DNA of 64,000 nucleotides from Blastocystis sp. Blastoise (GCA_039096225.1 JBBPEB010000014.1:1364001-1428000), one strand, 5' to 3'. Positions 47,702 to 64,000 are shown, numbered from the stretch's first letter. Numbers and translations are program-made. The notes: a model not told the origin generated them from the sequence alone.

Positions 47702-50700
47702 ATGAGTGTTCAAGTGAGATATCGATTCTCTTGTGATAATAAGATAATTAAAGAAGGATGTGAATTGAGGAATACAGTTTTTAATGAGACAGCTACAGAA
47801 TTCTTATATAGATGCATAGTAATTCATTCATATACATTATAATAATATTTATTATAGAAATGGAAACCCGAAGACTTTAATATTGGTTATACACTTTATA
47901 AAGGAGACCAAGAAGTGATCAACAAAGATTCTAGTGTTGAAAAAATAATACAAATGAACAATGATGTTTGTGTTGTCTTAGATATATCTGAAGAAAGTTT
48001 TCTTGAGAAATTTCCAAAGATGAAAGATTTTTATTCAATGAAATTAAATTCAGAACCAAATGAAAATGATACAAATGTATATATTAATTTATTTATAGAA
48101 TTGATATGTATTTCATTTATATTATTATTATATTTTGTTTTCTTTAGAATACATCTCTTGCAACAGGATATACTATTAATGTAGAAATTGCTCACTATGA
48201 TAACATTACTTCTAAATATATTCCAAAATATTATCAACAATTCTTTATATTACTTTTTGACGTATATATATATAAAGATTTTCTTTAAAATAATAAAGTG
48301 TTATATATATATTATAATTATTATGTATAATGTGTCTATACTATTATAAATATATATATAGAATAATTATTATGTATAATGTGTCTATACTATTATAAGT
48401 ATATATAGAATAATTCTAGTCCTTCTTCTTCAAATAAGAATCCTTCTGAAGATTCTCAATGTAAATATATATATATATATAATAACTTATTATTAATATA
48501 TATAGTATCTCCTGTGGATAATTCGGATAAAAAAGAAAATACTAAAATTGAAATAGTTAAGGAATACTTGAAAAACCAGGAGAGTCTTGAAATACTATTA
48601 ATTAAATTATGTATGAACAATAATATGAAAACTATAGAAAATGAAATGAATTCATTATTACAAGAATATAGTGAAGAGACTATTCAAGAAACATTAAATA
48701 AAATATATTCTATGAATAAGATTATAGATTATATAAAGAATAATAATCTTAATACTTATTTAAATAATCTTGGTTTTCAAATTAATTGTATATATATATA
48801 TATATTTCTATTTAATTTATAAGTTTTCTTTTTTATTTATTCTTCTCAATAATAGTTATACTATACTATATATATATAGAAACAATATTGATTCTTTAAA
48901 ACAACAAATTACTGATTATTTATCTGTATATATTTGTAGTATTATATATATATATATATAGAAAAAGTCCCCCAAAACTATTTATATTAATGACTTAAAT
49001 ACTCGTAAAATCACTATATACGAAAATTTTACAAAATATTATTATTATAAAACATTCATAGATTTCTTAAAAGTATATATATATAAAATGTTTATTTGAT
49101 TAATATAAATAATAGAAACAATATGGTGATCCTATTTATGTTCTATATAATAATAATGAACTTACTCCTGAAAACATTGATTCTATTAGGCAAAATCAAA
49201 TTAAAGAATTATATATTTCTGTTCTTAATGTATATATATATATAACTAAATAATTTGATATTCTTTATTTATATATAGTTAAAAAAGGCTCCTGATGTTT
49301 TTTGTAAACAAAAGTTTATCATTAAACGTAGTATATATATAAGTTATTATTTAATAAATAGATATTTGTAAAGTAAATACAATTATTGTTATATTTATAT
49401 ATATTTATATTTCTATAGGTATTTCTGAAGATAAGTTTTTTGAGAATAATAGGAATTTATCATCAGATGAAGAATATTCTGAATTAATAAAGAATAATAT
49501 CAATATTTGTCTCTACTGTAATTATTTTGTTGTTATTATCATTATCATTATATATATATAGTTGATCTTCATGATGTTTCGAATCATTTTGCTGATATTT
49601 CATTATTTCAACAGGATTATCTTTCTACAGTCACAGAAATCATTATTGATGGTATAAAATATAATAAATATAAATATAACAAATATAATAAATATAATAA
49701 ACATAAAATATAGATCGTTCTACGAATAGTCTTGAATATACTTGTTCCTATAAAGATAATACTTTAGTTATTACTCCTTCTAAAATGTGTCTAAAAGGTA
49801 TATATATCTCTATATATACCTATATATATAATATATAGTATCTTGTTATAAGGATGAATTATGTGAGTTTTTCCGTCTTCCTGAACTTTATACTAAACTT
49901 ATTTCATTACAGAGTTTTTCTATTAATTGTGAAGAACTGGATATGAAAAGTCAAGAATATCTACAATTCTTTACTTATTTATATAAAAAATATATTAATG
50001 ATCATGCTACTCCTGAAGAACTACAACGTTTCTCTGTATATTTATTCTCTATAAATATATATATATAATTATATATTATCTATATAGTTTAATGGTAATA
50101 AATTAATATATGATGAATCTAATCTTGAATCTTTTGAAGATCAAGAATATAAACTTCGTATATATAAATAGATAATTATTTTATTTACTGAATTTTATAT
50201 ATAATAATCTATTAAATAAGTCAAAACTATTATATATATATATAGATAATACTATACCTCATCGTCCTGCAGATCCTTCTTCGTATTTCTCTACTAAAGA
50301 AAATCATCCTTCTCCTTATGGATATACCCCTTATGCACCTTGCTATCTTGCTTTTGATTTAAATACTCAATCTCCTGCACTTATTACTCCTAATAACCTT
50401 ATATTACATACATTACATGAAGAACCATCAACTCAAAATAATGATAAATGTACTTCTATTCTATCTCTTCCTTGTTCTTTATATAATGGATTAGATACAT
50501 TATCTCTTGGTGATTATATTAATTTTAGTTATCAATCAACTGAAAATGAAGTTTATTTCTATCTTCCTTTACTTAAAAATATAGAATTAGATATGAATTA
50601 TCTAGATAATCAAACTATTAATTTCTTCTGTATTCGTCCTAACGATCCTATTCATTATACTAGTGATGAAAATGGAAAGAAAGAACCTCATTATAAAGGA

Positions 50701-62700: not shown

Positions 62701-64000
62701 ACATGTATAGATCAAGTAATAAAGCAAGCTACTTCTGTATGTAATAGTCGTCCTTATTCAAGTATGGAATTTGTATTTACTGATGGTATTTCTTGTGAAA
62801 TAGCTCGTAAAGAAATTAAGAATGTAATTATAAGTAGTGAAACTTCTTTTATAGGAATAGGTATTGGATATAGTATAGTAGATTATGAGAATATTTTCCC
62901 TTCTTTTATATGGTGTAGTGATATACATCAACTTCCTACTGCTTTAGAGAATATGCATACACCTACTACTAATCCTAATACTATATGTAATTATATGTGT
63001 GATACTATATATTATGAAAATTTATTAAATAAAGAATTCAATGATTATTTCCATGAAAAAGATATAAATAAGGTTATGGATATATATGGTGAATATCAAA
63101 AACTTCGACGACGTGAAAAATTTTTAAATATGAATTCTAATAAGAATAATAATGGTGGTGGTAAATTAGAAGATGAAAATGGTGATGATTCACGTGATGA
63201 TTTAGGTAGAGATGGTGCTTTTGATCAATTTAATGTATTATTTGTTGTTTTATATACTGCTAGACCTAATAATATAGATGAAGAAGGAAATCAAGTTGAT
63301 CCTGATGTTACTGTTGATAATTTAAAGAAAGGACCTGTAGCTAAATTAAAAGTTAAAGGATTTAGAGTAGATATAGTATATGATTATTTTGATGCTATGG
63401 ATCGATTAAGATCAGGTAAATATAGAAGTGTAATTATTACATGTAGTCCTGGTGATGGTGTTTTAGGAGATCCAGAACATCAAGGTGATTTTAATTATTT
63501 GAATAGTTTTATAAAATGTTTACATATATTCCATGCTCATCGTGGTGGTATTATGTTTATGTTAGAGAATTCTCCATTAGATTTTGAAGCTTGTAAATTC
63601 TTTAATTATGAAGATGGTCCTTATCATATAAGTGAGTTATGTGATACTGAAGAGAAGATAGAAGGACGTGGTTGGATTTATGAGAAGAAGATAGATAAAG
63701 TAGATGATGATAAAAAACCAAGTAAAAGTCAATTTGTTCCTATTGGTGAAGATTTGTTTAATAAAGAATGTAGATTACCTATTAATTATGGTTTAAATAA
63801 AATATTTGAAGGTGTAACATTAGCAAATATTAATGAAGATGAATTAGTTAATTGTGGTTTTAAAACATTTGCAAGAGAACAAAATGGTCATGCTGCTGTA
63901 ATGATAAAAGATGCATATCAGAATTATGGTAGAATAGTAATAGATACAGGTGCAAGTAAGTTATATAGTGATTGGTCAAGTGATGGTACAGCTCGTTGGA
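47702..64000 (+). CDS. Giant midasin/Rea1-related six-AAA+ ATPase with two vWA-like domains and an extra C-terminal domain (3'-truncated by window; >5000 aa)
   Basis: About 14 short 5' introns (one junction at 48788-48878 unresolved), then one frame-1 exon 50246-64000 in which I found no stop; GPTSCGKT (50938), GLESTGKT (52681), GAPGIGKS (54676), GPSPSGKT (55786), ERLNSLLE, HPDFRII, NFRLIATQNP; vWA-like segments at ~61380 and ~62460. Confidence 0.9.
55954..56127 (+). repeat. (AAT)58 microsatellite translated as poly-Asn inside AAA6
   Basis: Frame is preserved from LIGRME to LVFREGPLL. Confidence 0.9.

What the first reader, a model, noticed from the sequence alone, without database searches (positions are those of the whole stretch)
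47702..64000. Non-canonical midasin-like giant ATPase: six AAA modules, tandem vWA and an extra C-terminal domain
Seen: a 13.7-kb open exon missed by the ORF track. It encodes six MoxR/midasin-type AAA modules, but only AAA1 (GPTSCGKT/LLLDE) and AAA5 (GAPGIGKS/LLLDE) keep both Walker motifs. AAA2 and AAA4 lack Walker A; AAA3 has EN and AAA6 has DG at Walker B. After a long linker come two vWA-like domains (VNLIFDVNVS...ILSDG at ~61380-61690; a midasin-like PPNKA...GTSIHL...KKRLGGK then SIIIDCKCSS...FTDG at ~62320-62870), both with a degenerate DxSxS. The protein then continues for >350 aa. Known: Mdn1/Rea1 has a long D/E-rich tether and a single terminal MIDAS domain. Inference: this is a repurposed paralog, a large mechanoenzyme carrying a C-terminal effector, perhaps analogous to RNF213-type six-AAA proteins, rather than the ribosome-biogenesis ortholog.
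Basis: partly seen in the sequence, partly recalled or inferred. Interest (0 to 1): 0.8.

Follow-up and report, generated by a model that had tools for sequence, protein, structure and literature searches.

The report
Giant midasin-like ATPase gene family
This gene of a tortoise-gut Blastocystis encodes a roughly 5,400-residue motor protein that resembles the ribosome-assembly motor midasin but is not it. It is one of at least 15 fast-diverging copies of an unstudied family that was also found in human Blastocystis and in other oxygen-avoiding protists; its cellular job is unknown.

Summary
A stop-free frame runs from window 50176 past the window end to 64917 (4,913 codons), preceded by small exons from an ATG at 47702. 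It encodes exactly six AAA modules.

After a linker of about 1,600 residues come four domains:
- a vWA-like domain;
- a midasin-type MIDAS domain (Rea1 MIDAS Z 16.8; profile match 97.6%);
- a ThuA/GIFT-like domain with a glutamine-amidotransferase fold (Z 15.1) and no catalytic triad;
- a third vWA domain, which lies beyond the window.

It is not the MDN1 ortholog. A separate, intron-rich canonical MDN1 lies on contig 34. This gene has no midasin lid domains, no D/E-rich tether and no recognisable midasin linker, and its AAA modules fall outside all six canonical midasin module clades.

It is one of at least 15 giant paralogs. Relatives occur in Blastocystis hominis and in metamonads. Close copies differ by 516–1,468 bases without a single nonsense change, yet overall dN/dS is about 0.8.

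Most likely it is an ATP-driven protein remodeller that holds its target through a vWA head; the target is unknown. The scan already described this family on another piece of this genome (s1-726021).

The parts
47702..50159 (+). 5' part of the gene: ATG at 47702 and about nine short exons separated by short AT-rich introns. They encode an N-terminal region of about 550 residues with no Pfam match; a ubiquitin-like fold is a weak lead only.
   Evidence: tblastn of the first 620 residues of the annotated paralog P0001 maps colinear pieces from 47702 to 50159. Reading the frames gives the same result. No Pfam match in the N-termini of P0001-P0003. Language-model neighbours score 0.80-0.86 and include several beta-grasp families. 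The exons were not joined; searches used the paralog's database protein.
50245..64000 (+). Giant final exon. The acceptor is near 50245 and the stop-free frame starts at 50176. It runs off the window and ends with a stop at extrapolated coordinate 64915-64917, so the open frame is 4,913 codons.
   Evidence: It is 94% identical to P0001 from that protein's residue 558.
50848..51351 (+). AAA1, with Walker A GPTSCGKT and Walker B LLLDE. Predicted to hydrolyse ATP.
   Evidence: Pfam AAA_5 best stretch at residues 250-383. Module HMM E 2e-50. Motifs conserved in all seven aligned proteins (window plus P0001-P0006). dN/dS 0.48.
51736..52302 (+). AAA2, with no P-loop and QN at the Walker B position. 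Degenerate and probably structural.
   Evidence: Module HMM E 6e-30. The degenerate state is shared by all seven aligned proteins (window plus P0001-P0006).
52594..53106 (+). AAA3, with Walker A GLESTGKT and Walker B ILILEN (no catalytic Glu). Predicted to bind nucleotide but not hydrolyse it.
53524..54111 (+). AAA4, with no P-loop and NH at the Walker B position. Degenerate.
   Evidence: Module HMM E 2e-21. Family alignment.
54580..55200 (+). AAA5, with Walker A GAPGIGKS and Walker B LLLDE. The second predicted hydrolytic site.
55699..56463 (+). AAA6, with Walker A GPSPSGKT and Walker B INIDG (no Glu). It carries a 58-residue poly-Asn run between the two motifs that only this copy has.
   Evidence: The poly-Asn run is at exon residues 1927-1984, against 0-8 Asn in the five close paralogs.
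56464..61332 (+). Linker of about 1,620 residues. No Pfam match, no D/E-rich tether, and no detectable similarity to the midasin linker. It is the fastest-evolving part of the protein.
   Evidence: No significant Pfam match. D+E is at most 24% in any 100 residues. hhalign against canonical midasin linkers gives probability 0.1%. dN/dS 0.8-1.3.
61363..61920 (+). vWA1, a vWA-like domain with the family-invariant motifs D-x-N-x-S (DVNVS), PSTPLD and SDGYSEQLL.
   Evidence: AF2 gives pLDDT mostly above 90 and the vWA order of strands and helices. The language-model top hits are VWA, VWA_CoxE and CobT_C families at 0.91-0.94, and the ten best family-bearing hits share one family or clan. hhalign against MIDAS is weak (12%) but the motifs align in register. 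Motif conservation comes from alignment A3. No Pfam or PDB sequence match. dN/dS 0.36.
62029..62964 (+). vWA2, a midasin-type MIDAS domain that includes the midasin-specific element before strand 1 (PPNKA..GTSIHL..KKRLGGK). Its metal motif here is D-C-K-C-S, against the family consensus D-x-S-x-S.
   Evidence: VIA-align: Rea1 MIDAS 6qta Z 16.8, rmsd 3.2, 210 residues aligned; human MDN1 MIDAS 8ql1 Z 16.4. The family profile hits PDB midasin 6or5 residues 4417-4642 at E 6e-10. hhalign against canonical MIDAS gives 97.6%, E 2.6e-12. dN/dS 0.32.
63220..64000 (+). ThuA/GIFT-like domain with a class-I glutamine-amidotransferase fold and no catalytic triad, cut by the window end (it reaches about 64080). 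The third vWA domain (VWA_4 type, extrapolated 64138-64914) lies wholly beyond the window.
   Evidence: AF2 pLDDT 86.7, pTM 0.90. VIA-align: ThuA-like 1t0b Z 15.1, site-1 protease 8uw8 Z 14.7, OST48 6s7o_G Z 14.7, IFT52 5fms Z 14.0. Foldseek and Atlas agree. No conserved His; the Cys is only 76% conserved. For the third vWA, 8 of 14 family members hit Pfam VWA_4; the motif DTTGSM is degenerate here (ICTSGNQ).

Best explanation
The gene (window 47702 to extrapolated 64917) encodes a protein of about 5,400 residues. It belongs to an uncharacterised, expanded family of single-chain six-AAA mechanoenzymes of the MoxR/midasin class.

Shown here:
- A ring of six AAA_5-type modules. Only AAA1 and AAA5 keep both Walker motifs, AAA3 and AAA6 keep Walker A only, and AAA2 and AAA4 are degenerate.
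- A long linker that does not resemble the midasin linker.
- A four-domain C-terminal head: a vWA-like domain, a midasin-type MIDAS domain, a ThuA/GIFT-like domain and a VWA_4-type vWA domain.
- The family is separate from the genome's canonical MDN1, has at least 15 giant copies, and is kept open by selection while it diverges fast.

Inferred:
- Like Rea1/Mdn1 and the bacterial MoxR-vWA pairs (NorQ-NorD and relatives), the head captures a partner protein at vWA ligand sites.
- The family-invariant D-x-N-x-S / T / D site of vWA1 is the best candidate for that site in this copy, because the MIDAS motifs of vWA2 and vWA3 are degenerate here.
- ATP turnover at AAA1 and AAA5 moves the linker, so the bound partner is pulled out of, or reshaped within, a larger complex.
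- The many diverging paralogs would then serve different targets. The targets are unknown.
For: - Frame, extent and motifs.
- Six modules. Walker pattern conserved down to about 25% identity.
- MIDAS homology, including the midasin-specific element before strand 1. The best Foldseek hit is NorD vWA in the NorQD complex.
- vWA1. ThuA/GIFT fold. vWA3.
- Separate canonical MDN1.
- At least 15 giant paralogs, all carrying the ring and the MIDAS+ThuA module in one open frame.
- Selection: no nonsense change among 516-1,468 differences where 28-86 are expected, P < 1e-12, and all indels are in frame.
- The head domains and AAA1 are the most constrained parts, with dN/dS 0.32-0.48 against 0.82 overall.
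Against: - There is no experiment, no expression data and no known partner.
- The MIDAS motif of vWA2 (D-C-K-C-S) and that of vWA3 are degenerate in this subfamily, so metal-dependent capture as in Rea1 may not apply.
- The linker shows no similarity to the midasin linker.
- vWA1 is supported only indirectly: it has no Pfam or PDB sequence hit, and it was not folded and searched on its own.
- The ring and linker were not modelled.
- An overall dN/dS near 0.8 (a Nei-Gojobori estimate, biased in a 23% G+C genome) could partly reflect relaxed constraint.
Confidence: 0.6

Rival explanations
1. It is a surveillance or conflict machine. In this reading it is a eukaryotic single-chain counterpart of the bacterial diversifying MoxR-vWA conflict systems, or a functional analogue of RNF213. 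The diverging paralogs would recognise different foreign or selfish targets and the ring would drive a response.
For: - At least 15 giant paralogs plus shorter relatives.
- High dN/dS (0.82 overall, at or above 1 in parts of the linker), and dS varying from 0.01 to 0.27 along the gene, which suggests gene conversion.
- Relatives in Streblomastix and Tritrichomonas carry protein kinase annotations or domains, so the architecture varies.
- Earlier, unchecked scan notes place transposons in the flanking DNA beyond the window end.
- Bacterial MoxR-vWA systems with diversifying C-terminal domains are described as conflict systems in PMC7159879.
Against: - No recognisable effector enzyme: the extra domain lacks a catalytic triad, and Pfam finds nothing else.
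- The head domains, which should recognise targets, are the slowest-evolving parts.
- No known pathogen or trigger.
- The dN/dS method is biased by the AT-rich composition.
Confidence: 0.2
2. It is a cofactor-insertion or enzyme-activation chaperone of the NorQ-NorD, CbbQ-CbbO or CobS-CobT kind, fused into one chain. The vWA head would dock on a metalloenzyme and the ring would open it for metal loading.
For: - The best Foldseek hits of the vWA pair are NorD vWA domains in NorQD complexes.
- The language-model neighbours of vWA1 are the VWA_CoxE and CobT_C families.
- The AAA modules match Pfam AAA_5, AAA_3 and bpMoxR.
- The host is an anaerobe with many metalloenzymes (own knowledge).
Against: - By VIA-align and profile comparison the closest relative of vWA2 is the midasin MIDAS domain, including its special N-terminal element.
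- Fifteen giant, fast-diverging copies are unlike a conserved maturation factor.
- There is no linked client gene.
Confidence: 0.1
3. It is the organism's canonical MDN1/Rea1 ortholog, merely divergent, working in 60S ribosome maturation.
For: - Six AAA_5 modules and a midasin-type MIDAS domain.
- A relative in Kipferlia is auto-named 'Midasin' in UniProt.
Against: - A separate canonical MDN1 exists at C34:165,900-187,250, with the midasin lid domains and a terminal MIDAS region.
- This gene lacks PF17865, PF17867 and PF21108, the D/E-rich region and a recognisable midasin linker.
- Each canonical module clade M1-M6 excludes the family's modules with 100% support.
Confidence: 0.02
4. It is a decaying or non-functional repeat, or an annotation artefact: an open frame without function.
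For: - Overall dN/dS is about 0.8.
- This copy has a 58-residue poly-Asn expansion inside AAA6.
- The MIDAS motifs are degenerate.
Against: - A 14.7-kb open frame in a 23% G+C genome. There are no nonsense changes where 28-86 are expected, and all indels are in frame.
- Constraint is domain-specific.
- The motifs are conserved in relatives at 25% identity, which include metagenome proteins clustering with Blastocystis hominis gene fragments, and the MIDAS+ThuA module extends to metamonads.
Confidence: 0.03

Closest known systems
Midasin (Mdn1/Rea1), the 60S ribosome-biogenesis AAA+ mechanoenzyme
   Same: - One chain with six AAA_5-type modules that keep the odd/even module alternation.
- A long linker.
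- A MIDAS domain of the midasin type, including the special element before strand 1.
   Different: - Not the ortholog: a canonical MDN1 is encoded elsewhere.
- No midasin lid families, no D/E-rich tether, and a linker that is not recognisably related.
- MIDAS is not terminal. A vWA-like domain precedes it, and a ThuA/GIFT-like domain and a third vWA follow it.
- Only two modules have both Walker motifs.
- At least 15 paralogs instead of one gene.
- The metal motif is degenerate in this copy.
Bacterial MoxR-class AAA+ with a vWA partner (NorQ-NorD, CbbQ-CbbO, CoxD-CoxE, CobS-CobT; MoxR-vWA ternary conflict systems)
   Same: - The same AAA+ clade working with vWA domains that hold the substrate (PMC3495828, PMC7159879).
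- NorD vWA is the top Foldseek hit.
- vWA1 resembles the CoxE and CobT vWA families by language-model features.
   Different: - Those are homo-hexamers of one small AAA protein plus a separate vWA protein. Here six diverged modules, the linker and three vWA domains are one eukaryotic polypeptide.
- No client or third component is known.
RNF213 (mysterin)
   Same: By analogy only, from my own knowledge and not tested here: a giant single-chain ring of six AAA units of which two are active, followed by extra C-terminal modules.
   Different: - No E3 or RING module was found.
- RNF213 has no vWA domains (own knowledge).
ThuA-like / GIFT-type domains with a glutamine-amidotransferase fold (ThuA, IFT52 N-terminal domain, OST48, fourth domain of site-1 protease)
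   Same: The fold of the extra domain: Z 14.0-15.1 over 197-226 aligned residues.
   Different: - Sequence identity is only 10-14%.
- It has its own conserved motifs (EGxT, IDxG, GTxRxIxN).
- It always follows a MIDAS domain in this family.
- No literature search was made for this domain; the papers read do not report it fused to an AAA+ motor.

Membership tests
Midasin (Mdn1/Rea1) | Six tandem AAA_5-type modules in one polypeptide | tested here: met
   Six modules found by the module HMM, each with E <= 1e-21. Pfam AAA_5 E 1e-47.
Midasin (Mdn1/Rea1) | Midasin-specific AAA lid domains (Pfam PF17865 and PF17867) and PF21108 | tested here: not met
   Absent from the Pfam scan of the 4,608-residue frame. 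In the whole genome PF17867 is found only at the C34 locus.
Midasin (Mdn1/Rea1) | Orthology: the AAA modules group with the matching canonical modules | tested here: not met
   Clades M1 to M6 of seven canonical midasins each have 100% support and exclude all family modules.
Midasin (Mdn1/Rea1) | It is the single MDN1 of the genome | tested here: not met
   A separate colinear MDN1 lies at G000:C34:165,900-187,250. This family has at least 15 copies.
Midasin (Mdn1/Rea1) | Long D/E-rich region before the MIDAS domain | tested here: not met
   D+E is at most 24% in any 100-residue window.
Midasin (Mdn1/Rea1) | Midasin linker domain | tested here: inconclusive
   hhalign of the family linker against the canonical linker gives probability 0.1%, but both alignments are shallow (Neff about 3).
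Midasin (Mdn1/Rea1) | MIDAS domain of the midasin type | tested here: met
   6qta Z 16.8 and 8ql1 Z 16.4. hhalign 97.6%. PDB profile hit 6or5 at E 6e-10. It is not C-terminal here.
Midasin (Mdn1/Rea1) | Intact D-x-S-x-S metal site in the MIDAS domain | tested here: not met
   This copy and its five close paralogs have D-C-K-C-S. The family consensus is D-x-S-x-S.
MoxR-class AAA+ with vWA co-chaperone (functional class) | AAA+ modules of the MoxR/AAA_5 type combined with vWA domain(s) | tested here: met
   Pfam AAA_5, AAA_3 and bpMoxR. Three vWA-type domains.
MoxR-class AAA+ with vWA co-chaperone (functional class) | ATP-dependent remodelling of a vWA-bound client | not testable with these tools
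   This needs biochemistry. The one complex prediction tried gave no answer.
RNF213-type giant AAA E3 ligases | E3 module or RING domain after the AAA ring | tested here: not met
   No such Pfam family in any part of the protein. The folded C-terminal domains are vWA and ThuA-like.
Class I glutamine amidotransferases (as enzymes) | Conserved Cys-His-Glu catalytic triad | tested here: not met
   No conserved His. The Cys is 76% conserved and is not at a strand-helix elbow.

The most novel reading that the evidence does not exclude
The family is an ancient further lineage of eukaryotic single-chain six-AAA motors, separate from canonical midasin. Among named hits it appears in Blastocystis and in three metamonad groups (Parabasalia, Fornicata, Preaxostyla). 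In Blastocystis it has expanded into a diversifying set of intracellular machines, each seizing a different target with a vWA-MIDAS-ThuA-vWA head.
Probability: 0.25. Interest if true: 0.75.

Novelty: new variant of a known kind. Interest (0 to 1): 0.55.

Why it matters
Giant single-chain AAA+ rings are few, and each well-studied one (dynein, midasin, RNF213) does something fundamental.

This is a further lineage with its own design:
- two catalytic sites, at positions 1 and 5 of the ring;
- no acidic tether;
- a four-domain head built around a midasin-type MIDAS domain.

It is unstudied and mis-annotated. It is filed as 'hypothetical', as 'Midasin', or as split fragments in Blastocystis hominis. 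Yet the 15 giant open frames add up to roughly 220 kb of the 33-Mb genome of a close relative of the commonest eukaryote of the human gut.

It offers a natural experiment on how MIDAS and vWA domains are coupled to an AAA ring. It also bears on whether the common ancestor of eukaryotes had more six-AAA motors than the ones now known.

Tried and rejected
- **Pfam on the linker and C-terminus:** no significant match, so I turned to structure prediction and profiles.
- **vWA1 by sequence:** its profile against PDB sequences and Pfam gave nothing.
- **ThuA-like domain by sequence:** its profile against PDB sequences gave only chance-level hits.
- **vWA3 by sequence:** its profile against PDB sequences gave nothing. 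Support comes from Pfam VWA_4 hits in 8 of 14 relatives.
- **N-terminal ubiquitin-like domain** (a lead from s1-726021 and from my own reading): the language-model search gave only 0.80-0.86, with several beta-grasp families among the hits. This stays a lead.
- **Complex prediction:** the paralog's MIDAS domain (P0001:4399-4725) with its own N-terminal 95 residues gave no answer, score 0.00. This is evidence neither for nor against binding.
- **Linker homology to midasin:** none detected.
- **Literature:** the searches and the papers read did not turn up a description of this family. Only a table entry 'Midasin-like protein' appears in a Blastocystis SNP table (PMC9896827).
- **Canonical-MDN1 reading:** rejected.
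- **Pseudogene reading:** rejected.
- **Spliced model:** Searches of the N-terminus used the database protein of the 94%-identical paralog instead.
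Full report
**Where and what.** The window is G000:C8:1364001-1428000 of a 33.3-Mb genome of a tortoise-gut Blastocystis ('Blastocystis sp. Blastoise'); its G+C is about 23%. A stop-free frame starts at window 50176 and runs off the window end (4,608 codons in the window). 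With the flanking DNA it ends at a stop at extrapolated coordinate 64915-64917, so the open frame is 4,913 codons. The ORF listing misses it only because it does not list frames that run off the source. The N-terminus of the annotated paralog P0001 (5,369 residues, 94% identical) maps colinearly onto about nine short exons from an ATG at 47702 to 50159. The giant exon starts near 50245. The product is therefore about 5,400 residues.

**The AAA ring.** Pfam finds five stretches of AAA_5 (E 1e-47) and no midasin-specific lid family. A module HMM built here from family and canonical midasin modules finds exactly six modules, at exon residues 225-392, 521-709, 807-977, 1117-1312, 1469-1675 and 1842-2096. 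In an alignment with relatives down to about 25% identity, the same pattern holds in every member:
- AAA1 and AAA5 have Walker A plus DE.
- AAA3 and AAA6 have Walker A, but EN/DN/DH and DG/EG/ED at Walker B.
- AAA2 and AAA4 have no P-loop.

So the pattern is a family design, not decay of this copy. This copy alone has a 58-residue poly-Asn run inside AAA6.

**The C-terminal head.** Pfam sees nothing after the ring. A full-database profile search with the last 1,194 residues found 206 relatives, which gave alignments for folding.

Residues 3720-4329 fold with pLDDT 86.7.
- The second half is a midasin-type MIDAS domain. Its best matches are Rea1 MIDAS 6qta (Z 16.8, rmsd 3.2, 210 residues) and human MDN1 MIDAS 8ql1 (Z 16.4). 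The family profile hits PDB midasin 6or5 residues 4417-4642 at E 6e-10.
- hhalign against canonical MIDAS domains gives 97.6% and includes the midasin-specific element before strand 1. The top Foldseek hit is NorD vWA in NorQD complexes.
- The first half has the vWA order of strands and helices at pLDDT mostly above 90. Its language-model neighbours are VWA, CoxE and CobT families at 0.91-0.94. A weak hhalign match (12%) puts D-x-N-x-S and SDG in register with the MIDAS motifs. It has no Pfam or PDB sequence match. Its motifs D-x-N-x-S, PSTPLD and SDGxSEQLL are invariant or nearly so in the family.

Residues 4330-4654 fold with pLDDT 86.7 and pTM 0.90 into a ThuA/GIFT-like fold of the class-I glutamine-amidotransferase type. 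The best matches are 1t0b (Z 15.1), site-1 protease 8uw8 (Z 14.7), OST48 (Z 14.7) and IFT52 (Z 14.0). It has no conserved His and only a 76% conserved Cys, so it has no amidotransferase triad.

The last 260 residues lie beyond the window. They align with relatives of which 8 of 14 match Pfam VWA_4. The DTTGSM motif of those relatives is ICTSGNQ here. In this copy and its close paralogs the vWA2 motif is D-C-K-C-S.

**The linker.** There is no D/E-rich tether: D+E is at most 24% in any 100 residues. The linker shows no similarity to the midasin linker.

**Not MDN1.**
- The midasin lid family PF17867 occurs in the genome only at C34:169,981-173,659.
- A Phytophthora midasin matches C34:165,926-187,251 exon by exon, from its residue 314 to 6081, including the terminal MIDAS region.
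- In a tree of 78 AAA modules, each canonical module clade M1-M6 (a stramenopile, a plant, animals, a fungus, an amoebozoan and Anaeramoeba) has 100% support and excludes the family's modules.
- The deep odd/even split is shared between canonical midasin and this family.

**A family.** The genome holds at least 15 giant open frames of 4,429-5,515 codons, on contigs 3, 8, 13, 16, 21, 25, 26, 29 and 30. All carry the ring and the MIDAS+ThuA module in one frame. There are also shorter relatives, some of them close to the start of their contigs.

Relatives outside this genome:
- Single 14.8-kb ORFs in gut metagenomes.
- Fragmented gene models of Blastocystis hominis.
- For the MIDAS+ThuA module, metamonads: Kipferlia (auto-named 'Midasin'), Aduncisulcus, Dysnectes, Chilomastix, Streblomastix, Histomonas and Tritrichomonas.

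**Selection.** Six close copies (82-94% identical) differ pairwise by 516-1,468 bases with no nonsense change, where 28-86 are expected under neutrality (P < 1e-12). All indels are in frame. Nei-Gojobori dN/dS is 0.82 overall. It is 0.32-0.48 in MIDAS, vWA1, the ThuA-like domain and AAA1, and about 1 or more in parts of the linker. dS ranges from 0.01 to 0.27 along the gene, which suggests gene conversion. The method is biased in AT-rich DNA, and the contrast between domains serves as the internal control.

**Mechanism.** The established view is that vWA domains act as substrate-holding co-chaperones for the MoxR/midasin clade (PMC3495828, PMC7159879). On that basis I infer an ATP-driven remodeller. 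The head holds a partner, AAA1 and AAA5 supply the power, and the linker transmits it. The target is unknown. A test of the idea that the N-terminal, possibly ubiquitin-like region is bound by the MIDAS domain gave no answer.

**Known before.** No paper describing the family was found. The scan itself had already described the family on another piece of this genome (s1-726021). It had also noted another copy (s1-732362) and this gene's 3' part (s1-718642). My results agree and add:
- the MIDAS and ThuA fold evidence;
- the module tree;
- the canonical MDN1 locus;
- the selection analysis.

Noticed in passing
window 55954-56127 (exon residues 1927-1984): A 58-residue poly-Asn run (AAT-type repeat) sits inside AAA6 between Walker A and Walker B. 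It is present only in this copy; the five close paralogs have 0-8 Asn there.
   Followed up: partly
window 25756-26838 (-): A 361-codon open frame with Pfam DDE_3, HTH_Tnp_Tc3_2 and HTH_23: a Tc1/mariner-type transposase.
   Followed up: no
window 400-7176 (-): A 2,259-codon open frame with one He_PIG putative Ig domain (E 2e-16). Another very large intron-free coding stretch in this intron-rich genome.
   Followed up: no
G000:C8:1517246-1533245 (-), about 100 kb downstream of the window gene: The closest paralog (93.5% identical, 4,831-codon frame) lies on the same contig in inverted orientation. It is probably the annotated protein P0001 (WA158_002360).
   Followed up: partly
G000:C22:15829-16479, C16:17405-18055, C21:1115962-1116612, C25:9680-10543, C26:441052-442893: Shorter open frames (568-2,525 codons) carry only the MIDAS and/or ThuA-like part. 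Three of them gave identical scores, and three of the five listed lie within 20 kb of the start of their contig, so they may be subtelomeric duplicates or truncated copies.
   Followed up: no
window 47702-64000, and all paralogs: Introns are confined to the first 2.5 kb of the gene and the remaining 14.7 kb is one exon. All 15 giant paralogs and the metagenome relative P0004 share this layout, whereas the canonical MDN1 on C34 is split into many exons. The pattern fits 3'-biased intron loss through a cDNA copy (own knowledge).
   Followed up: partly
P0092 (Kipferlia bialata, UniProt A0A9K3CPN3): This protein is auto-named 'Midasin'. It has no midasin lid families, it carries the MIDAS+ThuA module, and its AAA modules group with this family in the module tree. 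The name is probably wrong.
   Followed up: partly
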